Below are positions 28,082 through 42,298 of a stretch of 64,000 nucleotides of DNA, piece after piece. Position 1 is the first letter of the stretch, and the number at the start of each line of letters is the position of its first letter. Under the pieces are notes generated by a model that worked only from the letters and a program-made list of their open reading frames with translations, did no database searches and was not told where the DNA came from. A program made the translations under genes and the position numbers. Where the stretch lies: the IMG/VR virus record IMGVR_UViG_3300044957_000763, positions 124,001 to 188,000 of that record, one strand, 5' to 3'.

Positions 28082-28097
28082 TGTGCAAAACAAATAT

Positions 28098-28318: not shown

Positions 28319-28328
28319 AGGTTTTAAG

Positions 28329-28403: not shown

Positions 28404-28418
28404 TTCAATTTCTTAAAT

Positions 28419-28566
28419 CTGCGCGGTACGAACGAGTTACGGTTATCCTTCTGTTAAAAGGGTTGCCCAGGTTCGATTCCTGGTCTCGGGACTAAAGACC
28501 ATCTTTAGACTCGAGATAATGTAGTGGTAGCATGCTAAAACATCGTTCTCACCCCTTGACCGCCAG
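28419..28566 (+). ncRNA. YrlA-like element D: permuted tRNA fold with anticodon arm (GTT, Asn)
   Basis: TCCTT-CTGTTAA-AAGGG, CCAGG-TTCGATT-CCTGG, TCTCGGG / 18-nt hairpin linker / CTCGAGA, D-arm ATGT-AGTGGTA-GCAT. Confidence 0.75.
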
Positions 28567-28583
28567 ATTTAAGAACACAGTTT

Positions 28584-28707
28584 CCGGTACGAATGAATAT
28601 TGGTTATCAATTAGTTCGACTCTAATATTCCCCTCTCAGATGTGGTATCATCCACGTTTGAAAGGGGAATCGCCCTGGTGGGCACCCAATTTCAAAACCT
28701 TGACCGG
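28584..28707 (+). ncRNA. YrlA-like element E: T-arm, closed acceptor stem, D-arm (no separate anticodon arm)
   Basis: ATTAG-TTCGACT-CTAAT, ATTCCCC/GGGGAAT joined by a hairpin, enclosed by CCGGTACGAA/CTTGACCGG. Confidence 0.7.
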
Positions 28708-28713
28708 TAAAAT

Positions 28714-28790
28714 CGGGCCGTAGCGTAGCTTGGTATCGCGCCTCGTTTGGGACGAGGAGGTCGCCAGTTCGAATCTGGCCGGCCCGACCA
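28714..28790 (+). tRNA. tRNA-Pro(TGG)
   Basis: CGGGCCG/CGGCCCG-ACCA; loop TT-TGG-GA. Confidence 0.95.
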
Positions 28791-28797
28791 TTTTTTT

Positions 28798-28876
28798 CGA
28801 GCTGTAGCGTAGCTTGGTTTATCGCGCTTACCTGGGAGGTAAGAGGTCGTGGGTTCAAATCCCGCCAGCTCGACCA
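28798..28876 (+). tRNA. tRNA-Pro(GGG)
   Basis: CGAGCTG/CAGCTCG-ACCA; loop CT-GGG-AG. Confidence 0.93.
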
Positions 28877-28884
28877 AGTTTCAT

Positions 28885-28961
28885 CTGGGGTCAGACTCAA
28901 GGTGGGTCGCCTATTTCGGAAGTAGGACATTAGCGGGGTTCAATTCCCCGACCTCAGACCA
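28885..28961 (+). tRNA. tRNA-Pro(CGG)
   Basis: CTGGGGT/ACCTCAG-ACCA; loop TT-CGG-AA. Confidence 0.88.
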
Positions 28962-28975
28962 AATTCAAGTATAAT

Positions 28976-29197
28976 GTGGATATGGCAGGCGTAATACCAC
29001 AATACTATATCTTTGTGAAGCCGTATACAGTTGGTGGAACTACGATTCACCCAGGTGTTTCGCTAAAAGGTGAGTTTGAAGTGACTGATACTCATATTTC
29101 ACAAAAGGGCTCGACTTTATTGTCGAACATCCCCAAGGAATATCTTGAACCTTACACACCGCACAAGTTTGAGAAGAAGGTGCGAAAGAAAAAATAG
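28976..29197 (+). CDS. Small hypothetical protein
   Basis: 73-aa ORF after a TATAAT box; basic C-terminus. Confidence 0.55.
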   Translation: MDMAGVIPQYYIFVKPYTVGGTTIHPGVSLKGEFEVTDTHISQKGSTLLSNIPKEYLEPYTPHKFEKKVRKKK

Positions 29198-29200
29198 ATT

Positions 29201-29275
29201 CCACGGATGGTATAGTGGCAATACGCTTGCATTACAAGCAAGAGATTTAGGGTTCGATTCCCTAGCCGTGGACCA
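29201..29275 (+). tRNA. tRNA-Val(TAC)
   Basis: CTTGC-ATTACAA-GCAAG; ACCA. Confidence 0.85.
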
Positions 29276-29282
29276 GGTTTGT

Positions 29283-29358
29283 CCTCAATTAGCTCAGTTG
29301 GTAGAGCGCCTCGTTTACACCGAGGATGCCGGGGGTTCAAGTCCCTCATTGAGGACCA
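29283..29358 (+). tRNA. tRNA-Val(TAC)
   Basis: CCTCAAT/ATTGAGG-ACCA; loop TT-TAC-AC. Confidence 0.92.
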
Positions 29359-29363
29359 GAATT

Positions 29364-29684
29364 TCATGCAACATGTTTGTCTCCAGCTACGCTGGCAGAC
29401 TTATAAACAACCAGTGTGCAATCAGTGATTGCTTCGAAGTCTGATTCTTCATATGGTTCAATAACCATGATGTCGCCGGCGTTCAAGACGTAATCGCCCA
29501 TGCGACATTCTCCAGAGATTATCAACGTCACCTCAGTGCTGCACTTGTGGTAGTGCATGGCGTTTGTTTCGCCAGCCTTGTAAGATTTGACACCGACTTC
29601 TGCGGTTGTGGTTTTGAAAACACAAGGTTCAAAATTTCCTACGAACCACCCTCCTTTCATTGAGTTGTGCTGGAATATGCGCAT
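29364..29684 (-). CDS. Cupin-domain protein
   Basis: MHYHK..TEVTLIISG..GD cupin motifs. Confidence 0.8.
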   Translation of the reverse strand: MRIFQHNSMKGGWFVGNFEPCVFKTTTAEVGVKSYKAGETNAMHYHKCSTEVTLIISGECRMGDYVLNAGDIMVIEPYEESDFEAITDCTLVVYKSASVAGDKHVA

Positions 29685-29758
29685 GTTTAGTTTGTACAGG
29701 CGCTATAGCCATTAATATGGTTGTTGATTTCATCGGTGAGTTTGGTCTATAATAAGTA

Positions 29759-30010
29759 ATGGACAAAGAGATTCAACTAATACCATTGCCCGATGATTTT
29801 GAAGGAAGAGTCGAGACAGGCCCAGTGCAATTTGGAGACGATTGGCCAGGGGTTTTTATTCGAGGCGACAGTGCGGCATACTATGCGGCGTCCATTCGTG
29901 CTATTTTGGAAAAATATGGCGAACAGATGCATAGGATAATGGAAATAGTACCATTGGTTGGTTTGATGGAAGATTTGGGCAGTTCCAATTTGATTAATCG
30001 ACAGCAATGA
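29759..30010 (+). CDS. Hypothetical protein
   Basis: 83-aa ORF (RVETGPVQFGDDWPGVFIRGD). Confidence 0.65.
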   Translation: MDKEIQLIPLPDDFEGRVETGPVQFGDDWPGVFIRGDSAAYYAASIRAILEKYGEQMHRIMEIVPLVGLMEDLGSSNLINRQQ

Positions 30011-30051
30011 AGACGCTTCTTGGCTGTGCTCTGTGATTTCAAGAACAAGAT

Positions 30052-30126
30052 GCCCCGGTAGTTTAGCGGTCAGAATGTTGGATTCTCAATCCAGCGAGCG
30101 GAGTTCGAGTCTCCGTCGGGGTACCA
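30052..30126 (+). tRNA. tRNA-Glu(CTC)
   Basis: GCCCCGG/TCGGGGT-ACCA; loop TT-CTC-AA. Confidence 0.9.
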
Positions 30127-30142
30127 TTTTTGCAATGTATTC

Positions 30143-30218
30143 GCTCTCCGAGCACGGTTGGTTGTGCGCTGCCATGACACGGCAGAGGTCGTGAGTTCGA
30201 ACCTCACGGAGAGCACCA
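30143..30218 (+). tRNA. tRNA-Val(GAC)
   Basis: GCTCTCC/GGAGAGC-ACCA; loop AT-GAC-AC. Confidence 0.9.
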
Positions 30219-30247
30219 TTTTCAAATCTAAGTGGTATAATAACCAC

Positions 30248-30574
30248 ATGAATACGGTAACTGATTCTAGTTTTGGTAAAGAGGTCGAAGAAGCCTCAGA
30301 TGAACAAGTTGTCATAGTCAACTTTTCTGCTTCTTGGTGTGGTCCGTGCAAGGCAATGAGGCCGCAGGTTGAGGCTATTGAGGCAAAATCCACTGGTGCA
30401 AAATTCGTATATTGTGACATTGATGACGCACCTATGCAAACAGAAAAGTTTGGTGTTTTAGGTGTGCCAACATATGTCGTGATGCGCAACCGCAAAGAAC
30501 ACGCAAGATTCGCAGGCTCAGGCCCACAAGTGTTAAGTGGCATTCAAGAATCAATTGAAAAGTTTTCGGTTTAG
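30248..30574 (+). CDS. trxA: Thioredoxin
   Basis: FSASWCGPCK active site; cis-Pro GVPT. Confidence 0.93.
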   Translation: MNTVTDSSFGKEVEEASDEQVVIVNFSASWCGPCKAMRPQVEAIEAKSTGAKFVYCDIDDAPMQTEKFGVLGVPTYVVMRNRKEHARFAGSGPQVLSGIQESIEKFSV

Positions 30575-30575
30575 T

Positions 30576-30648
30576 ACCGGCGGTTCTGGGCCAGAGACTT
30601 CAAGCTCATATCTTGAAGGAATGGGTTCGATTCCCTTCGCCGGTACCA
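30576..30648 (+). tRNA. tRNA-Met(CAT)
   Basis: ACCGGCG/CGCCGGT-ACCA; TCAAG-CTCATAT-CTTGA. Confidence 0.75.
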
Positions 30649-30671
30649 GTTTTCTCAAACATATTCAACAT

Positions 30672-30746
30672 GGCCAACTGGTGTAATGGCAGCTCGCCTC
30701 TATCACACGGAGAAGGTTCTGGGTTCGATTCCCAGGTTGGCCACCA
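30672..30746 (+). tRNA. tRNA-Val(CAC)
   Basis: GGCCAAC/GTTGGCC-ACCA; loop AT-CAC-AC. Confidence 0.82.
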
Positions 30747-30790
30747 AATTTACAGACCTGGGTTTACCCAGTGTTTTGATAGCAGAATGT

Positions 30791-31180
30791 TTAACAATCT
30801 TGCGGCCACTGAATATCGTAATCATCCGACTCTACTAGCTCTTCAGTAGACAATTTCACTCCTCCCCACTCAAGGTCTGCGGGTGATATGTAGTACATCC
30901 CCGGTATGTAATCAGCATATCCAACGTATTGATTTTGATGATATACCATGACGTTGCTTTCGTCTGCGGTGCGATATTCAAAGTAGAAAACCTTGTCTGG
31001 CCAGTCACCAGAGAACCTGTATTTTTGGTCATCGGGAATCGTAAGTTTGTTGTGTTCTATGTGTTCGTCTGTAAATTCAATATAGGCACCTCGTTGACCA
31101 ATTACAAGACGTCTATAACCAACGGCTACGAGTGTGCCGCTGTGTGTTTTGAATTCAATCGGAGTACTTCTCGAGTTCAT
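30791..31180 (-). CDS. Hypothetical protein
   Basis: 129-aa ORF. Confidence 0.65.
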   Translation of the reverse strand: MNSRSTPIEFKTHSGTLVAVGYRRLVIGQRGAYIEFTDEHIEHNKLTIPDDQKYRFSGDWPDKVFYFEYRTADESNVMVYHQNQYVGYADYIPGMYYISPADLEWGGVKLSTEELVESDDYDIQWPQDC

Positions 31181-31937
31181 ATCCTGCTACAAACGCATTC
31201 ATCAATTCATCCAAAAGATGTTTTGTGTCCGTGAGTCCAATTTTACCTTCGATTCTTGCGAATAGTTGATTTGCGTATGAGTTTGCAAAGTGCGTATCGA
31301 ATTGCTCCTCGAGCCATTCTGTTTCTTCTTCGCTTCGTGGCGTAATGCTTCGAAGAAATGATTCTGAATCTTTTGGCAATGAGTCAAATGAAAACTTGGC
31401 TACAATAGAGCAAGGGAAGAATTGCTCCTCAATTGGTTTTCCGTGTCTGTGTTCATCAAGTTTGGTTTTGTCAAATGTGTATCTGCTTTCTTCTCCAGGT
31501 CGACCTTGGTTGAATCCTTCGTACACTTCTAAGATTTTTTCGTCAAGGTTGATGATATACGCATATTCACAAAACAAAGAATCATAAATGAAATCGTTGT
31601 TTACGAGCATATACCCGCATATAAGCATTTCCTTGAGGTCACCCTGTAGACCTCTTGTCAAGCAATACCAATCTTCTTCTGATTGCTCTCCTACTCCATT
31701 GTGTGTATACGGCTTTAGTGCCTGTATGTCTTCGGCTGTTGGTTTGGGGCCGTCAATGCTGACAGTCTTGACATCATTAAGCATCTTTCTCACCCACTTA
31801 ATGCCGGGGTATTTTATAAGCGACCTGGTCAATTCAAGTGCTTCAACACCCAAAGATTCTGGATAACTGTCGCAATGGTTATATGTCAAGTAATCTTGAC
31901 CATTGTGTCTGAATCCGATGCTGCCTCGTGTTGACAT
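31155..31937 (-). CDS. Conserved phage hypothetical protein
   Basis: Likely start MSTRGSIG...YNHCDSYPESLG; SLFCEYAYIINLD pattern recurrent in phages. Confidence 0.7.
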   Translation of the reverse strand: MSTRGSIGFRHNGQDYLTYNHCDSYPESLGVEALELTRSLIKYPGIKWVRKMLNDVKTVSIDGPKPTAEDIQALKPYTHNGVGEQSEEDWYCLTRGLQGDLKEMLICGYMLVNNDFIYDSLFCEYAYIINLDEKILEVYEGFNQGRPGEESRYTFDKTKLDEHRHGKPIEEQFFPCSIVAKFSFDSLPKDSESFLRSITPRSEEETEWLEEQFDTHFANSYANQLFARIEGKIGLTDTKHLLDELMNAFVAGYELEKYSD

Positions 31938-31988
31938 ATATCCATTATGCCATAGGTGAGCACTGTTTGTCAACATAATCAATAAGCT

Positions 31989-32279
31989 ATGGTTTGTGTA
32001 ATTGAACTCGAGCTTGGGCAGTGTGGCGACCATCGAGCAACAGAACACGAACGTATTCAGCATAGAATCAAGGCAACTCATCAGGTTTATCACGAAATGA
32101 TGGAAGAATGCCGAATGCTTGGTGCGTCATTTCATGTTTATTCTATTTTAGACCGCCTTGGATATGTTGTTGCAGAATTGCCGGTGCATCATTGGTCATT
32201 GTTGAATTCTATGCACTGTGTAAAAGAAGTGCGCGAAAGTAAATTACACAAACGACTACGAGAATGCGATAATAACTAA
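31989..32279 (+). CDS. Hypothetical protein
   Basis: 96-aa ORF immediately upstream of the deaminase. Confidence 0.45.
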   Translation: MVCVIELELGQCGDHRATEHERIQHRIKATHQVYHEMMEECRMLGASFHVYSILDRLGYVVAELPVHHWSLLNSMHCVKEVRESKLHKRLRECDNN

Positions 32280-32280
32280 C

Positions 32281-32802
32281 ATGTCACAAAGACCAGGTTG
32301 GGATTCGCTGTTTATGTCAATGGCGATGTTGTTTTCAATGCGCAGTCCAGACACATCAACTAGGGTTGGGTGTGTTATCGCAGACCGCGACAATACTGTC
32401 ATGAGTCTTGGATACAACGGTTGGCCTCGAGGGGTTCAGTCTTTTGAACCAGGAGACGCGCGTTTTCAAAGACCAGAAAAGTATATGTGGATGGAGCACG
32501 CCGAGCGCAATGCCATCTATAATGCCTGTCGTAATGGCACACCGCTGAATCACTGCACACTGTATGCGACGCTTTTTCCGTGTGCTGATTGCGCCAGGGG
32601 TATTATTCAGGTTGGAATAGAGCGTGTAGTTTATCATGGCCCAAGCACTCAAATCATGAGGCAAATGAACCAGCAGTGGGATGCTTTTTACGGCGCGTCT
32701 ATGCGTATGTTTAATGAAGCCGGCATCGAAGTTGTGGAGTGGTTTGGAGACATTGTAATACCAGAAGGTCAATGTCAAGGTCAATCTATGCATTTTTGCT
32801 AG
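32281..32802 (+). CDS. dCMP deaminase
   Basis: SLGYNG, EHAERNAI, FPCADCA zinc motifs. Confidence 0.93.
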   Translation: MSQRPGWDSLFMSMAMLFSMRSPDTSTRVGCVIADRDNTVMSLGYNGWPRGVQSFEPGDARFQRPEKYMWMEHAERNAIYNACRNGTPLNHCTLYATLFPCADCARGIIQVGIERVVYHGPSTQIMRQMNQQWDAFYGASMRMFNEAGIEVVEWFGDIVIPEGQCQGQSMHFC

Positions 32803-32853
32803 ATTTCTTCGCATTGACCTCAAGAATCTGCACAATCATGGCAAGACCAAATT

Positions 32854-33339
32854 GTGCTGTACGCTTTATACTTTTTGCTGGTTGTGATTTCTCTGTTATT
32901 GTTTGATAACATTAAATTGCGCAGCCGCATTAGAACTGACGCGATGACTAGCGCAGTAACGCGCACGGTGTTTGAAAGCACACTAGTCCGTTGGCGAAAA
33001 TCCAAGAGTAAGTTCGCTGTTATTTACATTGACTGTGATGGGTTCAAGAGGGTCAATGATGCATATGGACACAAGGCCGGAGACCACGTGTTGTATGCAG
33101 TTGTTGAGTTTTTGAAGGAAATAGTGCGGCCATCTGACATGGTGGCAAGGTTGGGCGGCGACGAATTTGCCATACTTTTGCGCGATTGCAAAAGCGTTCA
33201 ATTGGTGGTCGAGCGTATTCAGGTGTTTAAGTACATTGGTGTGACACTTAGTTGTGGTTGGGCGACTTCTGATGAATATGACCCGCTAACTCTTGCTGAC
33301 ACGCGAATGTATGAGGCTAAACGAGCATCATATCAATAA
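32854..33339 (+). CDS. Diguanylate cyclase (GGDEF) with N-terminal TM helix
   Basis: IDCDGFKRVNDAYGHKAGD, RPSD I-site, RLGGDEF, ADTRMYEAK. Confidence 0.9.
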   Translation: MLYALYFLLVVISLLLFDNIKLRSRIRTDAMTSAVTRTVFESTLVRWRKSKSKFAVIYIDCDGFKRVNDAYGHKAGDHVLYAVVEFLKEIVRPSDMVARLGGDEFAILLRDCKSVQLVVERIQVFKYIGVTLSCGWATSDEYDPLTLADTRMYEAKRASYQ

Positions 33340-33688
33340 GACTTTCTTGGCGATTTTCTAAGTATCTCAAAAAGTATGTGACGGTTTTTCGACGACTGTA
33401 GCCGATGTGCTCCTGTGTGTCACAGATATCGAAGAAATCAGCGCCTATTTTAAGTAGACGATGTCTGTGTGGTTGGTCTCTCAATTCTGGAGTTAAATAT
33501 TCTCTGAGGTGCCAATGTATATCTTTCCATTCTGTAATTCTAGCGCGATGTGACCTGGTTAATCCCAACCTGATAATACTGATGTTTGAGTGTGAGTGAT
33601 TAAGTTCAGAATTGAATACGACCGCGTTTTTATACTTGCGATAGCGCCAATATCCGAGCTCATCTTTGGAGTATTCGCAAATGTCCAT
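33317..33688 (-). CDS. Hypothetical protein
   Basis: 123-aa ORF. Confidence 0.5.
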   Translation of the reverse strand: MDICEYSKDELGYWRYRKYKNAVVFNSELNHSHSNISIIRLGLTRSHRARITEWKDIHWHLREYLTPELRDQPHRHRLLKIGADFFDICDTQEHIGYSRRKTVTYFLRYLENRQESLIDMMLV

Positions 33689-33727
33689 GCATGAATTATA
33701 GCACGTGTGCTATAATAACCAGTAATC

Positions 33728-33803
33728 GCTCCAGTAGCTCAACGACAGAGCGGAGGTCTCTAACACCTCGACTGAGTGGGTTCAACTCCCACCTGGAGCA
33801 CCA
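33728..33803 (+). tRNA. Amber-suppressor-type tRNA (CTA)
   Basis: GCTCCAG/CTGGAGC-ACCA; GAGGT-CT-CTA-AC-ACCTC; own TGCTATAAT promoter. Confidence 0.88.
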
Positions 33804-33808
33804 AATTT

Positions 33809-34288
33809 ATGCAAGTATTCGTACCATCAACTGATATGCGCGAAAGCGTTAGAGTGTTAGATACTCTAAGATTGCGAAAGCAATTGTTAGAGTGCGTGGG
33901 GATTTTGTCGATTCTTCACAATCTTCCAAAGGCAGACGGCTCTCCGCGCAAAGGGCATCTCAATCATCCAGCAGTGCTTCAATGGAAATACTGGCCTGGT
34001 TGCTTGGCGACGTATGCCATGATGTGCGTGGAAGAACTTGAATCTCGTGGATTTTTCTCGGAAAAGATGCGTACTTCTGCCGAGGCATTTCAGACCGATG
34101 ACAACAAACCAGTTTGGTGGGGTGATGAGCAAGTTCATTCAACACATCGAAGTCGACTGCTACAAAAAGACCCTGTACACTACGGTCAATTCAATTGGGA
34201 AGAGATGAATCAAGAACCGCAGTCATATTGGTGGGCTATTCCATCGAGTAAATCTGAGTACAACTTGGAGCGCAGAGGTAAATCATGA
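33809..34288 (+). CDS. Pyrimidine-dimer glycosylase/endonuclease V-like (MSMEG_6728 family)
   Basis: MQVF...LDTLRLRKQLLE...HLNHPAVLQW...HSTHRSRLLQKDP. Confidence 0.8.
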   Translation: MQVFVPSTDMRESVRVLDTLRLRKQLLECVGILSILHNLPKADGSPRKGHLNHPAVLQWKYWPGCLATYAMMCVEELESRGFFSEKMRTSAEAFQTDDNKPVWWGDEQVHSTHRSRLLQKDPVHYGQFNWEEMNQEPQSYWWAIPSSKSEYNLERRGKS

Positions 34289-34761
34289 GGTTCATTTTCT
34301 TGGATATTGATGGTTGTCTGAATGACCGCACAATGATGTCAAATGGATTTTGTGGTATTGATGACGATAAAGTTGCGTTATTGAATCAAATTCTCTCGAA
34401 TCACGAGGATGTGTTCTTGGTGATTTCTTCTGCATGGCGATATATGTGCATAGCTAAAGATATGACTCTAAGAGGGTTTGAGGAAATGTTGTTGACCCAC
34501 GGTGTAGACTGCTACGGTCGTGTCCATGGTATTACATCTCCAGATGAGAAATATTGGCCAGACATTCCAACAAGTGACGATTATGCAGACCTTACTGTTC
34601 GCGCTCGTCAAATTGAAGAATATGTACAACAACATAACCCACAATCATTTGTGGTATTTGATGATTTGGATTTACCAGTTGACAATATAGTCAAGACTGA
34701 TGGTCAAATTGGCTTAGAGCAACACCACATATACTCAGCTCTGAACATTTTATTTCAGTAG
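34285..34761 (+). CDS. HAD-superfamily (Swiss Army Knife RNA repair-like) protein
   Basis: FLDIDGCLN, ISSAWR, VVFDD. Confidence 0.8.
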   Translation: MRFIFLDIDGCLNDRTMMSNGFCGIDDDKVALLNQILSNHEDVFLVISSAWRYMCIAKDMTLRGFEEMLLTHGVDCYGRVHGITSPDEKYWPDIPTSDDYADLTVRARQIEEYVQQHNPQSFVVFDDLDLPVDNIVKTDGQIGLEQHHIYSALNILFQ

Positions 34762-34772
34762 TTGAAGCCGTA

Positions 34773-34802
34773 TTGACAAACATTGGATTTGAGGATATAA
34801 TA
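34773..34802 (+). promoter_or_regulatory. sigma70 promoter
   Basis: TTGACA...TATAAT directly before a near-leaderless ATG. Confidence 0.7.
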
Positions 34803-35296
34803 TGAACATGCAAACCATTACCCTTTCTCGCGCACTTCAGGTCAAGAATCGCCTGGCTGAAAAAATCGCAGTTGCACAGAAGTTGGTGCAAGATTACAAC
34901 AGTAGCGTTGTAATCCCTGGACAGGCACCGGAGTTCAATGTGGCAGAGGTTTACAAACTCTATACCGAGCTACAGTATCGAATGGTCGATTTGAAAGACC
35001 GCATCAGCGAGGCAAATCGTCCTGTTCAGGCGACTATTTTCGAGCTTGCTGAGTTGAAAGGCCGCGTGCAGATGCTCAAGGGCTTGAACACGCGTAAAGG
35101 AAAGGAGTTTGCTAACTCGTATTCCATGTTTGATGACAGTGGTGAACCCAAGATGGTTGAGTACGTGGCAGTACTCGATAAGCAGTTCACTGCCGAAGAA
35201 ATTCGCGTTCTGCAGAATGAAATCGACAGTCGACAGGCTGACCTAGACCGCCACAATCATCAAACCATAATCGAATTTGATTTCGATTGGATGTAA
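34802..35296 (+). CDS. DIP1984/DUF6847-like coiled-coil protein
   Basis: ITLSRALQVKNRL...LKDRISEAN...LAELK...LQNEID..Q..LD..N pattern (recalled family resemblance). Confidence 0.6.
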   Translation: MNMQTITLSRALQVKNRLAEKIAVAQKLVQDYNSSVVIPGQAPEFNVAEVYKLYTELQYRMVDLKDRISEANRPVQATIFELAELKGRVQMLKGLNTRKGKEFANSYSMFDDSGEPKMVEYVAVLDKQFTAEEIRVLQNEIDSRQADLDRHNHQTIIEFDFDWM

Positions 35297-35317
35297 CGAT
35301 TTCGGCTTCGGTCGAAA

Positions 35318-35547
35318 CTAGGGGTGTGTAAGTGAGATGCGAGCCAGGTGCACAATCAGTGTATGTCTGGGTTCACTTCGGTGAATAGAAAACAAGTAAC
35401 CACTTGAAATGGTGACTATTATGGCAAACTTGTTCCTGACTAGGACTTTGAATGTCAAGATGCAAGGTTCAATTTAGTCAAAATACAAGGCGCAAAACGC
35501 AAGTCTTAAGAATCAACATTCACTCGGTCTTACAAACCACCCCTTAG
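35318..35547 (+). ncRNA. Structured RNA with 7-nt-periodic CAA loop
   Basis: GGGGTG-TGTAAG/CTTACA-CACCCC closing helix, UUCG hairpin, AACAAGT/ACTTGTT helix, GAATGT/ACATTC closing a repeat loop. Confidence 0.7.
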
Positions 35548-35592
35548 TATTTTGTTGAAGGTCGATTTTACACTTGTGTCGAACTGTTAATT

Positions 35593-36327
35593 ATGAGTTC
35601 GAAATACACACATCGACACGATGAAATTGTTCACTTGTGTAAAAACGCATTTACATTTTCAGAAGTCGAGCAACAGCTTGGTACATCAACACCAAACACC
35701 TCGCTTCGGAGATATATTAAGTTTCATAGCATACCAATGCCAAATTATTGCAGAGTTCGCGACGTTGATGATAATTTAGTAAAATATTATCAACCTATAC
35801 GAATTGAAGATTTGATAAATGGCATACGATTGTCAACGCATGCTGTAAAGAAATTTCTTTTTAAGAACGGTATCAAATCTCAAGAGTGTGAGATTTGCGG
35901 TTGGTGTGAACGACGTGCATCAAATGGAAAAATTCCAGTACACTTACATCACATTAACGGGAACCCATTTGATTGGACGATTGAAAATTTGCAGATTTTG
36001 TGCCCTAATCATCATGCACTCACTGATAATTTTGGTTCTCTGAATACAGGAAAAGGTTACATATTTGCAAATCGCCCAGCTACAACCAGGGCCCGCTTAG
36101 AGCACGAAACTAGCAATGCTTGTTTGTATTGCGCTTCTGCTTGTTCTTATAAGTCTAAATTTTGTTCTAGAGAGTGTCTATATATGAGTCAGCAAAAATG
36201 CATTAGACCAACTAAGGAACAATTAAAAGATGAGATAGCTAATAGCAACTGGATGGCTATTGGTCGCAAATATGGAGTGTCAGACAATGCTGTAAGAAAA
36301 TGGGCCAAGAAATATGGCATAATATAA
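35593..36327 (+). CDS. HNH endonuclease with C-terminal HTH
   Basis: CEICG...LHHINGN..D...NLQILCPNHH; AIGRKYGVSDNAVRKW. Confidence 0.88.
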   Translation: MSSKYTHRHDEIVHLCKNAFTFSEVEQQLGTSTPNTSLRRYIKFHSIPMPNYCRVRDVDDNLVKYYQPIRIEDLINGIRLSTHAVKKFLFKNGIKSQECEICGWCERRASNGKIPVHLHHINGNPFDWTIENLQILCPNHHALTDNFGSLNTGKGYIFANRPATTRARLEHETSNACLYCASACSYKSKFCSRECLYMSQQKCIRPTKEQLKDEIANSNWMAIGRKYGVSDNAVRKWAKKYGII

Positions 36328-36329
36328 TT

Positions 36330-36411
36330 GCCCCGTGGTTTGACGCTTGAGGCTTGAGCGATTGGTCCCTAAAACCAACAACAAAGGGTTCAACTCCCTC
36401 TCGGGGCGCCA
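36330..36411 (+). tRNA. Second, non-canonical tRNA with CTA anticodon
   Basis: TTGGT-CC-CTA-AA-ACCAA (C33 instead of U33); 6-bp acceptor; 14-nt D-loop; GCCA end. Confidence 0.55.
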
Positions 36412-36465
36412 ATTCTCTCACAAACTACAAGGTTCATTGTCTTCTGCTGTGTAAAAAAGACATAG

Positions 36466-38544
36466 ATGTCGAAGCAGATGAATAGTGAGATACTGAACGC
36501 CTTGCTAAAGGCTGCAAACGCTGCTGAACAGGCTGGCGACTTTCGTCTTGCAGACAGTGCTGACGAGTTGGCACAACGTGTGGCACAACTTTCTACTGCG
36601 GTTCAATTTGGCAAAACAGTTGCCAAGCCTGCGTTAACATATCTTGGTAACGACCAGGTTATTTTACCAACAGTTAAAGGACTCACAAACGCCACTGAAG
36701 GAAAGGCATTAGGAGAGGGTGTTTTAGAAAGTACGCCCGTCAATATGCTCGGAATCGGCGGCGGAGACTATTTCGGTTCATTAACAGACCCTCTTAATTG
36801 GGGACCAGACGCGGTCATGGCGCTCAACAAAATGAGGTTTATGAATATGTTGCGTTCGCAATTGATTAGTGCCGGGTATACCGAATTAGCAAATGACAAT
36901 GTGTGGAGAGTTTTTAAGAATATCCCCGGAGGACAAGGTGGTCTTGAGGACTTGTTGCGGGAGGCAGACCCTAAAGCTGCTGCTAAGTTTCTTGGAGAGC
37001 AAAAGGCAACTCCGAGGGGGCTTGCTGATTTCTTTACGCGTTTTCGCGAACGAGCAAGAGCGAACAAGGGCACTCATTGGGCTAGATTCAAGGCGCGGTA
37101 TATTACAAGTGCGGGCTGGGGAGGCAGTGCCAATCTATCTGCAGAAAGAGCGGAGCGTGTTAGGAATTTTATCAACAGCAAGATGACAGATGCAGATAAA
37201 GCATTAAGTACTGAAGAGTTGATTAAGAAGTATCGTCGAAATGTTGATGATGTTGAAGGCTTCGACAGAAGTAAAGTCAAAACCAAAGCACCTAAGACTC
37301 CAAAACCTAATGCAATTAAGGGCGCAAATTCTGTAATAAGCAAAGCATCGTCAGCGAAAGACCTGGTACAAAAAGCCGGTCAATATTTGAAAGAAAGACC
37401 GGAGCTGATAAAGCAGGCACTTTCCAAAGCCGGTAAAACCGAAGAAGGCGTTCAGTGGCTTAAGTTCTTAAAATCCAACAGCAAAGACGCCACTAAAGTT
37501 GGCAAGGGCATGAAGGCGCTCGGTCGAATTGCCATGGTTATAGCCATTGCAGATATTATTAGCGATGTCCCAGGTGCCGTTGCAGGAGACGCACAGGCAC
37601 AACTTGATATTTACATTAACACTCTTGGCCTGGCTTTTCCACCTCTTGCCATTGCCACAGCATTGACAAGTTTGTTTGGGCTTGATTTATCTGAAATGAT
37701 TATTGCTAATGTTACGCATTTGGGCGAGGTTGCATCAGGTGTTGACACAGCACAAACCAACGAAGACCTTATCAATGCTGGTATGACCTACAATCCGCAA
37801 ACCAAAGAGTGGGAAAATGGTGGTGTAGAACGCTCATATGACACTAATACTGGCAAATCATTCGAGGCTGGGATGATGAATATGGTTAAGTCTGGTATGA
37901 GTATTAATCAGGCATGGTTGATTACGTTAAGAAAAATGAAGGCTTCTGGTTCTACACCAGAAGAAATTCTTACGGCGCGACAAAAATACAACCAAGCCAA
38001 AACTATGATTTACAATGAGGGAATGATTGGCTCAATAAAAGCACCTATGTGGAGCGAAAGCCAAATCGCTGAATTTGAAAAGTCTTTGAACAAGCACATT
38101 GTCGCCAAGCTGAATGCTGGAGTTGCACAAGCAGAACTATTGCGCGAGATTGATTCTTACATGCGCAAGGTTCCAAATCTTCGTATGATAAGTGCTATTC
38201 GTTCTAGAGTTGTTGGCAATCTTAACGCAGCGCAAAAAAGCATTGAGAAGGGTGAAAAACCAATTACACCACAGGGTCAGCAAAATACAACTACCAAAGA
38301 AAAGGTAAATAACACATTGATGTCACGAGCACAACGTTCTCGAGGTCCTCGTGTCGCAATTTGGCAAAAATTCTTGGCTCAAAATGGTTTCTTCCCTGGA
38401 TACAATCAAAACACACCAGCGGTCTTTGGTCCTCGAACAACACGCGGTACTCGCGCTTTTCAGTCAAGATACAATTTGAGGGTAGATGGAGCGGCCGGCC
38501 CAGAGACGCTTGCGAAAGCGAGGCAACTGGGTGGTAAACTATAG
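36466..38544 (+). CDS. Large putative virion protein with C-terminal peptidoglycan-binding domain
   Basis: PG_binding_1 pattern RGPRVAIWQ..L...FGPRT...AFQ...LRVDG.AGPET; N-terminal LLKAANAAE.AG...AD..D helix. Confidence 0.7.
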   Translation: MSKQMNSEILNALLKAANAAEQAGDFRLADSADELAQRVAQLSTAVQFGKTVAKPALTYLGNDQVILPTVKGLTNATEGKALGEGVLESTPVNMLGIGGGDYFGSLTDPLNWGPDAVMALNKMRFMNMLRSQLISAGYTELANDNVWRVFKNIPGGQGGLEDLLREADPKAAAKFLGEQKATPRGLADFFTRFRERARANKGTHWARFKARYITSAGWGGSANLSAERAERVRNFINSKMTDADKALSTEELIKKYRRNVDDVEGFDRSKVKTKAPKTPKPNAIKGANSVISKASSAKDLVQKAGQYLKERPELIKQALSKAGKTEEGVQWLKFLKSNSKDATKVGKGMKALGRIAMVIAIADIISDVPGAVAGDAQAQLDIYINTLGLAFPPLAIATALTSLFGLDLSEMIIANVTHLGEVASGVDTAQTNEDLINAGMTYNPQTKEWENGGVERSYDTNTGKSFEAGMMNMVKSGMSINQAWLITLRKMKASGSTPEEILTARQKYNQAKTMIYNEGMIGSIKAPMWSESQIAEFEKSLNKHIVAKLNAGVAQAELLREIDSYMRKVPNLRMISAIRSRVVGNLNAAQKSIEKGEKPITPQGQQNTTTKEKVNNTLMSRAQRSRGPRVAIWQKFLAQNGFFPGYNQNTPAVFGPRTTRGTRAFQSRYNLRVDGAAGPETLAKARQLGGKL

Positions 38545-38577
38545 TTGTTGCTTGAATTAGCAACGGATTGACATGCA

Positions 38578-41500
38578 ATGTGGTACAGAACTATTGTAGC
38601 TGCAAGAAACGGCGTATATGTTTCAGAATTGAATTTACCAATCAATGAAACACTGCACGCAATTCTTGAGGATTTGAGGTCACAAGGATTTAAGGCCTTG
38701 GTGGTCGGCGGTGCTGTGCGAGACGCGGTGATGGGTGTGGTGCCCAAAGACATTGATGTTGAGGTTTATGGAGCAGACTATGACACTTTACACACAACAC
38801 TCACCAAATACGGTCGCGCCGACGTAGTTGGTAAAAGTTTTGGTGTGTTGAAGTTGCGCACGCCCGATGGTCAAGATTATGACTTTAGCGTTCCTCGGCG
38901 TGACAGTAAAACAGGAGATGGGCATACAGGGTTTAAAATTACTGTAGACCATACAATGACACCAGAGCAAGCGGCAGCCCGCCGCGATTTCACCATGAAT
39001 TGTTTTTCTGGAGAAACGAAAATATTGACCAAATCAGGACCGAAATCATTAATGGAATTATGTGGTCAACAATGTGAGGTGTTAGACGGAAACGGTGAGT
39101 GGACACACGCAGATGTTAGGTCGTTTGGTGTTCAAAAATTGTTAAAATTGACTGTTACCAGAAATAGAATTGTCAAAACGATTTATGCAACTCCAAATCA
39201 CAGATGGTTTATCAAGAATAAACACACATATGTTTTTGACCGCGAAAGAACGACTGAGAATTTGCGGTGCGGTCACATGCTTCCGTCTGTGTATCCAATT
39301 ATTCAATCTACACAATTAGACAATGAGTCTATTTGTAGGGGGTTTGTATTTGGTGACGGCAACATTGTTGTTTTTGACAGCGGGAATGCGGTGAGCATTG
39401 CTAATTTTTGCGGTGAAAAAGACTCACATTTATTACCTTTATTTGAAAAACTGGACATGGGTCGACCCCCTCATGATATCCCATCGGGCAAGCGCATCTC
39501 TTCTCTTCCGCCAAATTGGAAGTTAGAAACTCCAGAATTTTCTGAATCATATGAATATCTACTTGGGTGGTTGTCTGGTTATTTTGCCGCTGATGGTTGT
39601 GTAGACTCTAAGGGATGTCCTGTGTTGAGTTCTTGCAATAGGGAAAATCTTGAATATGTAGAGCAACTTTGCAGATGTGTTGGTATCGGTACATATCAAA
39701 TCAGTCAATGTAAAATTGGTTCTGGGTACAATTCAAAAAGTGAATGTTGGTCTTTGGGCTTTGTGCGCAAAACTTTGTTTTCTGATTTTTTTATTATTCC
39801 AGAGCACAGAAAAAGATTTAACTCTGCAACCAATAGTCGGAATCGAACTGCATGGAAGGTTGTTAGTGTTGATGATTCAGATAGGATTGAAGAGGTTTAT
39901 TGTGCTGTAGTGCCGACCACTCATACATTTTGCCTAGATGGCAATTTGTTGACATCAAATTGTCTTGCGTATGACCCGTTGACGTCTGAGATACATGACT
40001 ACTATGGTGGAATTGAGGACTTGGAGAACGGTGTGTTGCGCGCCACCACAGAGGCATTTAAGGAAGACCCTTTGCGTGTATTGCGCGGCATGCAATTCGC
40101 TGCCAGATACGGTATGCGTCTAGACCCTGACACTGCAAAGATGTGCAGGGAAATAGTCGATGCGCATGACGAGTTGGCAACTGAGCGCATTGCAGAAGAA
40201 TGGATGAAACTTGCCATTAAGGGAAAACAACCAGGAACCGCACTCGAATACTTGGCAGACACTGGATGGCTAAAGCATTATCCAGAGCTTGAGGCCATGT
40301 TCGATGTGCCCCAAGACCCAGAATGGCACCCGGAAGGCTGGGAGCACTTCGATGCACCAGAACACAAAAGAAACCTATATACCAAAGAAGACCAAAATGT
40401 ATCTCACTGGCAAGACGTTATTGGTTTTCGGGGCGACGCACCAAGCGGTAGTAAAATGGTCTCGACACCTTATAAGTCCACAAATCCAGAACGCCAGCAT
40501 GAGAACAGCCCAGAACCACACATTTATGTCACTATGGATGTTCCTATTGACAGCTATTGGAGATATGTGTACGAACAAGACAGAATTGATGCCAAACCTA
40601 TAGCCAACCTTGCTGTTAGACACTTAATGTCTCAATATGGTGGTGCCGAACTTAATGGCAAGACCCACTATCGTATGATTGGTTCATTGAAAGCCAGTCC
40701 AGCAGTGTATTGTCATGCCGAACGACAAGGTGACCATGTTGAATTGACCGTTGGGCTTCATAGTGAGTTGTCTAAGGAGTTGTTAGACCGTGGATGCCCA
40801 CTTCATGTTTATGTGAAAATGGGCGATGTAGCCACGCATACTGCACACGTGATGGATGCAGCCGCTGCAGTTGCAGAGCGAGACGGACTGATTGGTGATG
40901 ACAGGGCAACATTAGTACTTGCCGCTATGGTGCATGATATTGCCAAGCCACAGACCACAGAAATCCAGCAACGCGCCGGCAGGGGTATGTCTGTAACTTC
41001 GATTGGTCACGAAAAGGCCGGAGAACCAATTGCTGTAGACCTACTCAAAAGAATGGGCATTAAGAAGTCAATCAGGGATAAGGTTGGTCCAATGGTGGCA
41101 CGTCATTTGGCGCATGTTACCACGACCCCAACTAAGTCTAATGTGCGCAAGCTGGCTCGTGATATCGCACCAGCCAGCATTGAAGAACTTGCCAAGTTGA
41201 TTGAGGCCGACCATTCTGGTAGGCCACCATTGCCACAAGAGTTACCTCGTCAAGCCCAGGATATGTTGGATATTGCTAGAAAAGACGGTGTAGCCAACGG
41301 CAAGCCCGCACCAATTGTGCAAGGCAAGCATGTTCTGCCATATTACGGTGGCGCGTCAGGGAAACATATTGGTGAAGCGGTACAGGAAGCATATCGTGCA
41401 TACTTAAATGGTGCCTATGACAACTTTGAAGGTGGACAACAGTGGTTGAGCAATTATTTACAGTCTCGAGCCTCTATGCTTAGAGGTTCAGATGTTATAG

Positions 41501-41646
41501 CACTTGGTGTTAAACCCGGTCCAGTGATTGGTCAAATACTCAACGAGGCATGGCAAATGCAGATTGTGGGCACGTTCACGAGTCGTGAGGATGCTCTTGC
41601 TTGGCTGTCGAATCGAGTGAATTCTGACGCCACGTTAACGCAGTAG
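38578..41646 (+). CDS. cca: CCA-adding tRNA nucleotidyltransferase with HD domain, intein and extra insertion
   Basis: VGGAVRD, DIDVE, RRDFTMN, EDPLRVLR, ERIAEEW, PQDPEWHPEG, VHDIAK. Confidence 0.9.
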   Translation: MWYRTIVAARNGVYVSELNLPINETLHAILEDLRSQGFKALVVGGAVRDAVMGVVPKDIDVEVYGADYDTLHTTLTKYGRADVVGKSFGVLKLRTPDGQDYDFSVPRRDSKTGDGHTGFKITVDHTMTPEQAAARRDFTMNCFSGETKILTKSGPKSLMELCGQQCEVLDGNGEWTHADVRSFGVQKLLKLTVTRNRIVKTIYATPNHRWFIKNKHTYVFDRERTTENLRCGHMLPSVYPIIQSTQLDNESICRGFVFGDGNIVVFDSGNAVSIANFCGEKDSHLLPLFEKLDMGRPPHDIPSGKRISSLPPNWKLETPEFSESYEYLLGWLSGYFAADGCVDSKGCPVLSSCNRENLEYVEQLCRCVGIGTYQISQCKIGSGYNSKSECWSLGFVRKTLFSDFFIIPEHRKRFNSATNSRNRTAWKVVSVDDSDRIEEVYCAVVPTTHTFCLDGNLLTSNCLAYDPLTSEIHDYYGGIEDLENGVLRATTEAFKEDPLRVLRGMQFAARYGMRLDPDTAKMCREIVDAHDELATERIAEEWMKLAIKGKQPGTALEYLADTGWLKHYPELEAMFDVPQDPEWHPEGWEHFDAPEHKRNLYTKEDQNVSHWQDVIGFRGDAPSGSKMVSTPYKSTNPERQHENSPEPHIYVTMDVPIDSYWRYVYEQDRIDAKPIANLAVRHLMSQYGGAELNGKTHYRMIGSLKASPAVYCHAERQGDHVELTVGLHSELSKELLDRGCPLHVYVKMGDVATHTAHVMDAAAAVAERDGLIGDDRATLVLAAMVHDIAKPQTTEIQQRAGRGMSVTSIGHEKAGEPIAVDLLKRMGIKKSIRDKVGPMVARHLAHVTTTPTKSNVRKLARDIAPASIEELAKLIEADHSGRPPLPQELPRQAQDMLDIARKDGVANGKPAPIVQGKHVLPYYGGASGKHIGEAVQEAYRAYLNGAYDNFEGGQQWLSNYLQSRASMLRGSDVIALGVKPGPVIGQILNEAWQMQIVGTFTSREDALAWLSNRVNSDATLTQ
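39001..39960 (+). mobile_element. Intein (320 aa) with LAGLIDADG homing endonuclease
   Basis: Begins CFSGET, block B TPNHRW, GFVFGDG and GYFAADG, ends VYCAVV...LLTSN; +1 residue Cys. Confidence 0.92.
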
Positions 41647-41845
41647 CGCCGGCCCAAATTACCTGCAAGACCACTACTGAATATAATTGGTGGAACCACG
41701 CGTCTACTGCAATCATTATTGGTCCAACAATGTTGCACATTTCATAAAATGTGCTTTCTTGTTTGATTTTTCCAGCACGCATGGCAACATAGCTACCGAC
41801 AACAATAAATATTCCTGCCCAACCAAGTACATCAAGTAAATTCAT
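41576..41845 (-). CDS. Small three-helix membrane protein (CBU_0592-like)
   Basis: LGWAG...SY...NIVG...LQVIW hydrophobic pattern. Confidence 0.6.
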   Translation of the reverse strand: MNLLDVLGWAGIFIVVGSYVAMRAGKIKQESTFYEMCNIVGPIMIAVDAWFHQLYSVVVLQVIWAGATALTWRQNSLDSTAKQEHPHDS

Positions 41846-41858
41846 CTATTTATTATGT

Positions 41859-42266: not shown

Positions 42267-42298
42267 GCATTGTTGGAATTCATGGTATAATCACGAAT

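What the first reader, a model, noticed from the sequence alone, without database searches (positions are those of the whole stretch)
34773..35547. DIP1984-like coiled-coil gene followed by a ~230-nt RNA with a 7-nt-periodic CAA loop
Seen: one promoter drives the 164-aa gene, then a UUCG hairpin, then a closed multi-helix domain (35318-35547). Inside it, GAATGT/ACATTC closes a loop with CAA at 35456, 35463, 35470, 35479, 35486, 35493, 35500, TAA at 35507, CAA at 35514 and CAC at 35521. The spacings are 7,7,9,7,7,7,7,7,7, and the bases between triplets vary. Known: periodic short motifs in single-stranded RNA are how ring oligomers such as TRAP (NAG repeats) are bound. Inference: a protein-ncRNA pair in which an oligomer of the coiled-coil protein binds the heptad loop. 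It may be a ribonucleoprotein of unknown function or a type III toxin-antitoxin-like arrangement.
Basis: partly seen in the sequence, partly recalled or inferred. Interest (0 to 1): 0.75.

Follow-up and report, generated by a model that had tools for sequence, protein, structure and literature searches.

The report
Conserved heptad-repeat RNA beside DIP1984 gene
A huge lake-water phage encodes a small three-helix protein followed by a ~230-base folded RNA carrying ten "YAA" triplets spaced seven bases apart; the same gene-then-RNA pairing recurs in distant phages, and with a different RNA in bacteria and plasmids, so it looks like an undescribed protein-RNA module of unknown function.

Summary
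All listed CAA/TAA/CAC positions, the 7,7,9,7x6 spacing, the perfect promoter, the cUUCGg hairpin and the closed domain 35318-35547 are present. Shuffles never give a chain longer than 6, against 9 observed.

The array is not chance. The AA of all ten units, the single 9-nt step and the terminal UCAACA are invariant in ten relatives whose proteins fall to 52% identity. Looser YAA heptads follow the homologous gene in five further phage contigs (one measured at 29% protein identity).

A covariance model gives 92.5% paired cells and 38 of 64 pairs with compensatory changes. Short metatranscriptome contigs cover only the RNA domain.

The protein model matches PDB 3KDQ (DIP1984, Z 12.4). Bacterial and plasmid DIP1984/DUF6847 genes are also followed by a conserved, covarying closed RNA with ~6-7-nt YA periodicity. 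No Rfam family matches either RNA, and I found no paper.

Two corrections. GAATGT/ACATTC is not a conserved helix. Units 1-3 sit in a supported hairpin, so only units 4-10 look single-stranded.

The gene-RNA coupling is well supported. Binding of a protein oligomer to the array is inferred and untested. A type III toxin-antitoxin reading fails every defining feature tested.

The parts
34773..34801 (+). Sigma-70-type promoter TTGACA-17 nt-TATAAT. The -10 box ends 6 nt before the ATG at 34808, so the mRNA is probably leaderless.
   Evidence: 12/12 consensus match. A -10 box sits 6-7 nt before the ATG of MQT/MET... in the 10 close and mid-distance relatives that have one, with no Shine-Dalgarno sequence.
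34808..35296 (+). DIP1984/DUF6847-fold protein gene: 162 aa from ATG 34808, or 164 aa if read from 34802.
   Evidence: NCBIfam DIP1984_fam E 2e-4, 21.5 bits, below the 70-bit cut-off. AF2 model pLDDT 96.5. Best PDB match 3KDQ, Z 12.4, 142 residues aligned. 13 close homologues; 1489 clusters at E<=1e-3. Single copy in the 478,840-bp genome.
35301..35316 (+). Hairpin just after the stop codon (cUUCGg tetraloop in the window); no U-tract follows it.
   Evidence: A hairpin at this place with different stem sequences is present in L009, L010, L016, L003 and L013.
35317..35548 (+). Closed multi-helix RNA domain. P1 35317-35329/35534-35548; P2 35332-35343/35523-35533; P3 35344-35370; P4 35371-35386; small hairpins about 35400-35434; hairpin 35437-35480; single-stranded array to 35522.
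   Evidence: RNAalifold on 6 close sequences. CM R1 recovers L009, L008, L010 and L016 full length. 92.5% of cells paired versus 80.6% in shuffles and 28-41% when slid; 38 of 64 pairs have changes on both sides. A P1 helix with an unrelated sequence is present in all 15 phage-type RNAs. No Rfam match.
35438..35452 (+). Invariant GAYnnnGAYnnnGAR motif (period 6) immediately 5' of the heptads. It forms the 5' strand of hairpin 35437-35480.
   Evidence: Invariant columns in A1. Also present in L303.
35456..35523 (+). Heptad array of ten units with consensus n-U-C-A-A-R-r, starting at 35456, 63, 70, 79, 86, 93, 35500, 07, 14 and 21. The one 9-nt step lies between units 3 and 4. The array ends in an invariant UCAACA.
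   Evidence: The AA of every unit and the spacing 7,7,9,7x6 are invariant in 10 relatives.
35479..35522 (+). Units 4-10, the part of the array predicted to be single-stranded.
   Evidence: No supported pairs here. The one small helix proposed (helix 9) is 68% paired with no covariation.
35593..36327 (+). HNH homing-endonuclease ORF inserted between the RNA and the tRNA-like gene. It is not part of the module.
   Evidence: phrog_10822 E 6e-29; PADLOC HEase. Absent at this place in L002, L012, L013 and L009; a remnant remains in L003.
36330..36412 (+). Unusual tRNA-like gene with a CUA anticodon and an 8-bp acceptor stem. In relatives without the HNH ORF it directly follows the RNA and is probably on the same transcript.

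Best explanation
The region is one transcription unit. A consensus promoter starts a probably leaderless mRNA for a 162-aa three-helix protein of the DIP1984/DUF6847 fold. The same transcript continues into a ~230-nt closed, multi-helix RNA that accumulates as a discrete stable species.

The RNA presents a register of short purine-rich marks. These are GAY-GAY-GAR at 6-nt spacing, then ten (N4)YAA units at 7-nt spacing. Seven of the units are single-stranded, between hairpin 35437-35480 and helix P2.

Several copies, or repeated surfaces of an oligomer, would line up along the array with one YAA per 7 nt, and the closing helices would hold the array in a fixed frame. The resulting ribonucleoprotein, not the protein alone, would be the working entity.

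Shown: the RNA is real, structured, conserved and genetically coupled to the gene across phages; a differently built RNA occupies the same place in bacteria and plasmids; the RNA domain is present on its own in RNA libraries. Inferred: protein binding, its stoichiometry, and any downstream role. A link to tRNA or translation is suggested only by the recurring position beside tRNA arrays.
For: - Conservation of the register. AA of all ten units, the 9-nt step, UCAACA and GAYnnnGAYnnnGAR are invariant in 10 sequences with proteins 91-52% identical, while the spacer bases vary.
- More distant pairs. Looser NAA heptads lie inside a closed domain after the homologous gene in L031, L108, LR756511, LR756500 and L303, with different neighbours.
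- Structure. 38 of 64 pairs show compensatory changes, and 0 of 500 shuffles reach the observed values.
- Wider family. 20 of 201 bacterial genomes searched have a true DIP1984 gene. In 15 of these 20, a conserved closed RNA follows. 18 of its 22 predicted pairs are compensatory, and YA autocorrelation peaks at lag 6-7 (51 and 45 versus 16.6 expected). The same core is found on A. baumannii and E. faecium plasmids.
- Motif tracks protein clade. The array reads UCAAG in the window clade, UAAA/UUAAARG in LR756511 and L108, and YAC in bacteria. That fits a co-encoded reader better than a universal host factor.
- Expression. In four metatranscriptomes, contigs of 226-372 nt cover 35335-35549. Two of these runs have no depth on the ORF, and one contig starts with adapter sequence joined to the 5' strand of P1. 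At least 15 RNA libraries hold the conserved part, including libraries of only 1-2 Mb of contigs.
- Protein. A confident model shows long helices with conserved K/R/N/Q positions (K15, N16, R17, K65, N72, R73, K86, R88, Q145, N152).
Against: - There is no direct evidence that the protein binds RNA. It has no recognised RNA-binding domain, and the complex prediction was not run by the tool.
- Adjacency could reflect co-expression or cis-regulation rather than binding.
- Units 1-3 are base-paired, so a simple model of ten equal sites is too tidy.
- The phage covariance model does not detect the bacterial RNAs, so homology of the two RNA types is not shown.
- RNA-library contigs can include carried-over DNA (caveat).
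- The oligomeric state of the protein is unknown.
Confidence: 0.5

Rival explanations
1. The RNA is a stable 3'-derived small RNA whose heptad array binds, as a sponge or decoy, some other factor rather than the upstream protein. Candidates are a host RNA-binding protein, a ribonuclease that cuts at YA steps, or a tRNA/translation component. The DIP1984-like protein would help or act separately.
For: The RNA domain is abundant on its own in RNA libraries. The module sits next to tRNA arrays in the window, in L031 and in bacterial L301, and next to a suppressor-type tRNA-like gene. An RNA-repair-type HAD gene lies upstream. Many short repeated motifs are the design of known sponge RNAs such as CsrB (established knowledge).
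Against: The motif changes with the protein clade (YAA versus YAC). The pair is kept together across phages, plasmids and several bacterial phyla with no other conserved neighbour. A universal host factor would need to exist in all of these hosts.
Confidence: 0.2
2. The domain is only a cis-acting 3' untranslated element. It would protect the leaderless mRNA from 3' exonucleases or serve as an autoregulatory site. The short RNA seen in libraries would be a decay intermediate with no role of its own.
For: It is on the same transcript, with no terminator between gene and RNA. The closing helices could block exonucleases. In bacteria the unit ends in an intrinsic terminator after the RNA.
Against: A 230-nt five-helix domain with an invariant 10-unit register is far more than protection needs. 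The array is more strictly conserved than the protein. Two RNA libraries with RNA-only contigs show no ORF depth at all.
Confidence: 0.13
3. It is a type III toxin-antitoxin-like pair, in which the RNA neutralises a toxic protein.
For: It is a two-part protein-RNA module with no conserved neighbours, found on plasmids and phages. The RNA contains repeats.
Against: The RNA lies after the gene, not before it. The units are 7 nt and sit within one folded domain, not about 36-nt tandem repeats cut into monomers. The protein is a three-helix bundle like 3KDQ, not a ToxN/AbiQ-type endoribonuclease. No PADLOC match.
Confidence: 0.05
4. It is not an RNA feature at all: a chance repeat, a DNA-level repeat (iterons or a microsatellite), or the 31-codon ORF 35452-35547.
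For: Simple heptanucleotide tandem repeats are common in genomes; most hits of my loose pattern were of this kind. An ATG-started ORF overlaps the array.
Against: Shuffles never reach the observed chain. Substitutions follow a period of 7, not 3, and relatives have in-frame stops (for example the TAA in L012). The helices covary. The feature is strand-specific and is present in RNA libraries.
Confidence: 0.02

Closest known systems
HutP bound to hut mRNA (Bacillus subtilis anti-terminator)
   Same: Triplet motifs in single-stranded RNA separated by 4 variable bases, so the period is 7. They are read by a protein oligomer, and the sites fall into two sets (established knowledge).
   Different: The HutP motif is UAG, in 3+3 sites within a 5' leader that controls termination. 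HutP has an unrelated fold. Here there are ten YAA units inside a closed 3' domain, and no HutP-like protein is present.
TRAP bound to the trp leader (11 NAG repeats around an 11-mer ring)
   Same: A regular array of triplets with variable spacers acts as a register for one subunit per repeat (established knowledge).
   Different: TRAP repeats have a period of 5-6, a (G/U)AG motif, a beta-sandwich ring protein and an attenuation role. None of these features is found here.
CsrB/RsmZ-type sponge RNAs
   Same: A small RNA carrying many copies of a short motif that binds a protein in multiple copies.
   Different: GGA motifs lie in hairpin loops at irregular spacing, and the protein (CsrA) is encoded elsewhere. 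Here the spacing is strict and the gene is adjacent.
Type III toxin-antitoxin systems (ToxIN, CptIN, TenpIN)
   Same: Protein plus repeat-containing RNA encoded side by side, on phages and plasmids.
   Different: The gene order, repeat length, RNA processing and toxin fold all differ (see the membership test).
ROOL and GOLLD large RNAs of phages and prophages
   Same: Structured, abundant non-coding RNAs located in or beside phage tRNA gene clusters (established knowledge).
   Different: They are 2-3 times longer, are not coupled to a specific protein gene and have no heptad array. Their Rfam models do not match here.
Assembly-origin or nucleocapsid registers of RNA viruses (TMV origin with G every third base; pneumovirus N protein covering 7 nt per subunit)
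   Same: A periodic base pattern, or a fixed number of nucleotides per subunit, sets the register for a helical protein coat (established knowledge).
   Different: Those proteins package genomes. Nothing here suggests packaging, and the resemblance is only conceptual.
Ro60 (Rsr) with Y RNA in bacteria and phages
   Same: The protein gene has its partner non-coding RNA encoded next to it. The bacterial DIP1984-linked RNA also has a T-loop-like hairpin, as Y RNAs do.
   Different: No Ro/TROVE protein is present, the Rfam Y-RNA models do not match, and the architecture is different.

Membership tests
DIP1984 / DUF6847 protein family | Score at or above the curated cut-off of NCBIfam NF038048 (70 bits) or Pfam PF20935 (27 bits) | tested here: not met
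   NF038048 gives 21.5 bits, E 2e-4, but full-length (residues 8-155 on profile positions 2-147). No Pfam hit at E<=0.01. True bacterial members score 188 bits on PF20935.
DIP1984 / DUF6847 protein family | Same fold as the solved member (PDB 3KDQ) | tested here: met
   AF2 model pLDDT 96.5. 3KDQ is the top hit in both searches: Foldseek probability 1.00, TM 0.71-0.76; VIA-align Z 12.4, 142 of 152 residues, rmsd 3.0. The next hit has Z 8.5.
DIP1984 / DUF6847 protein family | Linked to true members through intermediate sequences | tested here: met
   A profile of the phage proteins finds 1489 clusters. One of these, P0014, hits PF20935 at E 9e-4. The nearest Atlas clusters are viral, one with 23% DUF6847 members, and a bacterial 'putative septicolysin' cluster scores 0.91.
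Type III toxin-antitoxin | Antitoxin RNA gene of tandem ~34-36-nt repeats lying upstream of the toxin gene, separated from it by a terminator | tested here: not met
   The RNA is downstream, the units are 7 nt within one folded domain, and no terminator lies between gene and RNA.
Type III toxin-antitoxin | Toxin is a ToxN/AbiQ-type endoribonuclease | tested here: not met
   The fold is a three-helix bundle like 3KDQ. No PADLOC, Pfam or PHROG match to ToxN or AbiQ.
TRAP / HutP-type periodic-triplet RNA sites | NAG (TRAP) or UAG (HutP) triplets read by the cognate ring protein | tested here: not met
   The motif is YAA. The period of 7 equals HutP's, but neither a TRAP nor a HutP domain is present in the neighbouring ORFs.
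Any Rfam 15 RNA family | Covariance-model match at or near the gathering score | tested here: not met
   There is no match over 35297-35592 at E<=1 or at gathering score. None is found in the related phage loci or the bacterial and plasmid loci.
Protein-bound RNA (ribonucleoprotein) in general | Physical binding of the co-encoded protein to the RNA | not testable with these tools
   The protein-plus-RNA complex job was accepted but not folded, and it carries no verdict.

The most novel reading that the evidence does not exclude
DIP1984/DUF6847 proteins (often mislabelled 'septicolysin') are the protein half of a widespread, so far unrecognised ribonucleoprotein. The family has about 1500 clusters at 50% identity, in bacteria of several phyla, Acinetobacter and Enterococcus plasmids and huge phages. 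The RNA half is encoded immediately after the gene. It is a closed, covarying domain whose ~7-nt YA(A/C) periodic strand acts as a ruler on which a fixed number of protein copies assemble. The phage version, with its strict ten-unit YAA array in a tRNA island, would be the clearest example.
Probability: 0.4. Interest if true: 0.85.

Novelty: categorically new. Interest (0 to 1): 0.8.

Why it matters
A structured RNA with a strict 7-nt register, conserved more tightly than the protein beside it, is very unusual. Its consistent pairing with a domain of unknown function would give that family its first functional lead: it may work with an RNA. The family has a solved but unexplained structure (3KDQ) and is common on clinical Acinetobacter plasmids.

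It would also add a new RNA class to the structured RNAs found in phage tRNA islands. The RNA appears abundant in wastewater, sludge and soil metatranscriptomes. The hypothesis can be tested in cultivable hosts that already carry the module.

Tried and rejected
- Protein-plus-RNA complex prediction (4 protein copies plus 93 nt of the array). The job was accepted but not folded and carries no verdict, so it is not evidence either way.
- Protein-pattern scans of IMG/VR with the window protein, A2 and A4. Only P0019 gave one locus.
- DNA pattern scans. The strict pattern in viral contigs gave 16 hits, of which one (L031) was real. Those two capped scans were therefore largely wasted.
- DNA search of the phage collection with the region: no match.
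- PDB sequence search with the phage profile: only coiled-coil noise (KIF9).
- Coding reading of GAC-TAG-GAC... and of ORF 35452-35547: rejected, because substitutions have a period of 7 and relatives carry stops.
- TAG recoding: not seen in this window.
- GAATGT/ACATTC as a conserved helix: rejected.
- Homology of the phage and bacterial RNAs: model R1 does not hit the bacterial loci.
- Literature searches for DIP1984, DUF6847, 3KDQ and heptanucleotide-repeat ncRNA: nothing relevant. The 'septicolysin' papers only repeat an annotation.

Full report
**Setting.** The window is bases 124001-188000 of a 478,840-bp IMG/VR virus record with direct terminal repeats, that is, a complete huge phage. 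The DNA is held by lake-water metagenomes. The window carries 26 tRNA genes and a tmRNA. The finding lies at the edge of this tRNA island.

**Check of the observation.**
- CAA is at 35456, 35463, 35470, 35479, 35486, 35493 and 35500; TAA at 35507; CAA at 35514; CAC at 35521. The spacings are 7,7,9,7,7,7,7,7,7.
- The promoter at 34773-34801 is a 12/12 match to TTGACA-17-TATAAT.
- The hairpin after the stop codon has a cUUCGg tetraloop.
- The 296 nt after the gene fold at -88 kcal/mol, z = -4.15.
- A chain of nine YAA units, allowing one 9-nt step, compares with at most 5-6 in 20,000 dinucleotide-preserving shuffles. It is the only chain of five or more in the 64-kb window.

**The gene and protein.**
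- The ORF gets only a sub-threshold but full-length hit to NCBIfam DIP1984_fam: E 2e-4, 21.5 bits against a cut-off of 70. It has no Pfam, PHROG or PADLOC hit.
- An AlphaFold model built on 42 homologues is confident (pLDDT 96.5). It shows three long helices and a small sheet.
- Its best structural match by far is PDB 3KDQ, the functionally unknown C. diphtheriae protein. VIA-align gives Z 12.4 with 142 of 152 residues aligned, and the next hit has Z 8.5. Foldseek gives probability 1.00.
- A true bacterial member matches 3KDQ by sequence at E 3e-37 and Pfam DUF6847 at E 9e-56.
- The phage protein is therefore a distant member of the DIP1984/DUF6847 fold family. It is not a member by the curated sequence thresholds.
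- A profile of the phage proteins finds 1489 clusters at E<=1e-3 among 1.8 billion representatives. The nearest Atlas clusters are viral.
- The -10 box sits 6-7 nt before the ATG of MQT... in the ten close and mid-distance relatives that have one, with no Shine-Dalgarno sequence. The mRNA is therefore probably leaderless and the true start is 34808.

**Conservation of the RNA in close and mid-distance relatives.**
- Thirteen homologous proteins (91-52% identity) were found, and their contigs were fetched. Every contig with enough sequence has a gene-free gap of at least 240 nt after the gene.
- Aligning ten of these regions shows invariant AA in all ten units, the invariant 9-nt step, an invariant terminal UCAACA and an invariant GAYnnnGAYnnnGAR just upstream. 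The bases between the triplets vary.
- The unit consensus is n-U-C-A-A-R-r.
- Substitutions follow a period of 7, not 3, and relatives carry in-frame stops. The overlapping 31-codon ORF is therefore not coding.

**More distant phage loci.**
- A pattern scan of IMG/VR and a scan of metagenome contigs each gave one further true locus (L031, L108). Both have a homologous ORF immediately upstream.
- tblastn found the gene in two published huge phage genomes, LR756511 and LR756500, at 40% and 29% identity. One more locus, L303, came from P0019.
- All five have a closed domain with NAA heptads after the gene: UAAA/UAAG in L108, UUAAARG in LR756511, UUCAAA/UUUAAA in LR756500 and L303.
- In LR756511 a 28-codon Lys-rich ORF lies between the gene and the RNA.
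- The flanking genes differ among these loci, yet the gene and RNA stay together.

**Structure of the RNA.**
- RNAalifold on six close sequences gives P1 and P2 (long-range closing helices), hairpins P3 and P4, two small hairpins, and a hairpin at 35437-35480. In that hairpin the GAY-GAY-GAA segment pairs with units 2-3 and with the 9-nt spacer.
- A covariance model built from this alignment recovers L009, L008, L010 and L016 over its full length, at E 1e-17 to 2e-6.
- On the resulting 12-sequence alignment, 92.5% of cells are paired. This compares with 80.6% in column shuffles and 28-41% when partners are slid by 1-3 columns. 38 of 64 pairs have changes on both sides, and 0 of 500 shuffles reach any observed measure. 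The alignment was fitted to the model, which favours the structure, but the slid controls are far lower.
- All 15 phage-type RNAs have a long closing helix of unrelated sequence.
- Units 4-10 (35479-35522) are the part predicted to be single-stranded.

**Expression.**
- Contigs of four metatranscriptome runs (wastewater, soil, sludge) hold a close relative that resembles L003.
- In two of the runs the only contigs are 226 and 247 nt long. They cover just 35335-35543, with zero depth on the ORF. One begins with adapter sequence joined directly to the 5' strand of P1.
- At least 15 RNA libraries from six or more studies hold the conserved part, including libraries with only 1-2 Mb of contigs.
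- This fits a discrete, abundant RNA of about 225-230 nt. DNA carry-over cannot be excluded with these data.

**The bacterial and plasmid counterpart.**
- A search of 201 genomes of one phylum found true DIP1984 genes in 20.
- In 15 of these 20, the 250 nt after the stop codon share a conserved layout: a closing helix, GCAGGTAGC, a T-loop-like hairpin GGGTTCGAnnCCC, GTTACTACCAYGTGCTGG, GGTGAGGGYGGG..GGGG, and then in several an intrinsic terminator. Four others have a variant that lacks the G-rich motif, and one (L294) differs.
- RNAalifold on 15 such sequences gives 22 pairs, of which 18 have compensatory changes. These include long-range helices that enclose the centre.
- Within that centre, YA dinucleotides show an autocorrelation peak at lags 6-7 (51 and 45 versus 16.6 expected) and again at lags 13-15.
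- The same core follows the DIP1984 gene on an 8.7-kb A. baumannii plasmid and on an E. faecium plasmid.
- Neighbouring genes vary.
- No Rfam 15 family matches any of these regions. Searches for DIP1984, DUF6847 and 3KDQ found no relevant paper.
- The phage covariance model does not detect the bacterial RNAs. What is shared is the layout (gene, then closed domain with a roughly 7-nt periodic strand); RNA homology is not demonstrated.

**Interpretation.** Three levels should be kept apart.
1. This is a real, conserved, structured RNA. I put this near certainty.
2. It is functionally coupled to the DIP1984-like gene. I put this at about 0.85. The pair is kept together across wide divergence and changing neighbourhoods, and the array motif changes with the protein clade.
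3. The protein binds the array, several copies in register. I put this at about 0.5. It is the simplest reading of a strict short-period register beside a helical protein rich in conserved K/R/N/Q residues, but it is inference.

The main rivals are a sponge or decoy for another factor, and a purely cis-acting 3' element.

A type III toxin-antitoxin reading fails on gene order, on repeat size and processing, and on protein fold. The closest functional analogies are HutP (same 7-nt period), TRAP and Csr-type sponges. The element is a member of none of these.

The recurring position beside tRNA arrays (window, L031, bacterial L301) hints at a role in tRNA or translation biology. So do the suppressor-type tRNA-like gene that directly follows the RNA in relatives and the T-loop-like hairpin in the bacterial RNAs. 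These are only hints.

**Limits.** The complex prediction with RNA was not folded. My two capped scans of metagenome and genome contigs used too loose a pattern and returned mostly microsatellites. The sample of phage-type loci is 15. No experiment on any member is known to me.

Noticed in passing
window 36330-36412: An unusual tRNA-like gene. It has an 8-bp acceptor stem with compensatory changes across relatives, a 6-bp D stem, anticodon loop CYCUAAA (anticodon CUA), a short variable region and an encoded GCCA end. ARAGORN misses it in the window and calls it tRNA-Pyl(cta) in L013; Rfam gives only a weak tRNA-Sec hit. It directly follows the heptad RNA in L002, L009, L012 and L013.
   Followed up: partly
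window 33728-33803: A second, ordinary-shaped tRNA with a CUA anticodon (amber suppressor type), conserved about 1 kb upstream of the gene in relatives. Even so, TAG ends 33 of 116 ORFs of at least 100 aa in the window, and reading it through fuses no more genes than TGA or TAA would. No recoding is visible here.
   Followed up: partly
window 35593-36327; L003 about 3750-3820; L008 3730-4125: An HNH homing-endonuclease ORF is inserted between the RNA and the tRNA-like gene in the window and in L005. Only its last ~20 codons remain in L003. A TnpB gene on the opposite strand occupies the same spot in L008. This short spacer is a hotspot for mobile-element insertion.
   Followed up: partly
L009 (GCA_018268375.1, contig JAFDWS010000002.1, 1.36 Mb): A contig binned as an Armatimonadetes MAG carries the same phage-like block as the huge phage: dCMP deaminase, GGDEF, HAD_SAK_2, DIP1984-like gene plus RNA, tRNA(CUA) and a PG_binding_1 protein. 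It could be a prophage, a mis-binned phage or a chimeric assembly.
   Followed up: no
L046, L116, L042, L084, L056, L102, L103, L090, L123, L130, L140, L143 (marine metagenome contigs): Arrays of 12-30 'CAAGCNN' heptads with variable last two bases and, in many, a single 9-nt unit. They are flanked by conserved hairpins. No DIP1984-like ORF lies on these contigs, and the arrays may sit inside a small ORF beginning M..HPNYYKELRKR. They seem to be a separate, unexplained heptad element.
   Followed up: partly
L277 3012-3098 (LR756511): A 28-codon lysine-rich ORF (MAKGKTPKKEPKK...) lies between the DIP1984-like gene and its heptad RNA in this huge phage only.
   Followed up: no
window 20131-20485 and 24520-44041: The phage encodes a tmRNA (tag ANNNFALAV) and 26 tRNAs, several duplicated. 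It also encodes a GGDEF diguanylate cyclase (32854-33339), a pyrimidine-dimer glycosylase (33776-34288) and an RNA-repair-type HAD protein (34285-34761) just upstream of the finding.
   Followed up: no
L028, L030, L032, L033 (IMG/VR contigs): Near-perfect tandem 'GTTCAAG/GTTCAAA' heptads follow a small hairpin and precede 'GGTGAAAGATGAATAG' in four related viral contigs. No DIP1984-like ORF was detected on them. Their relation to the present RNA is unknown.
   Followed up: no
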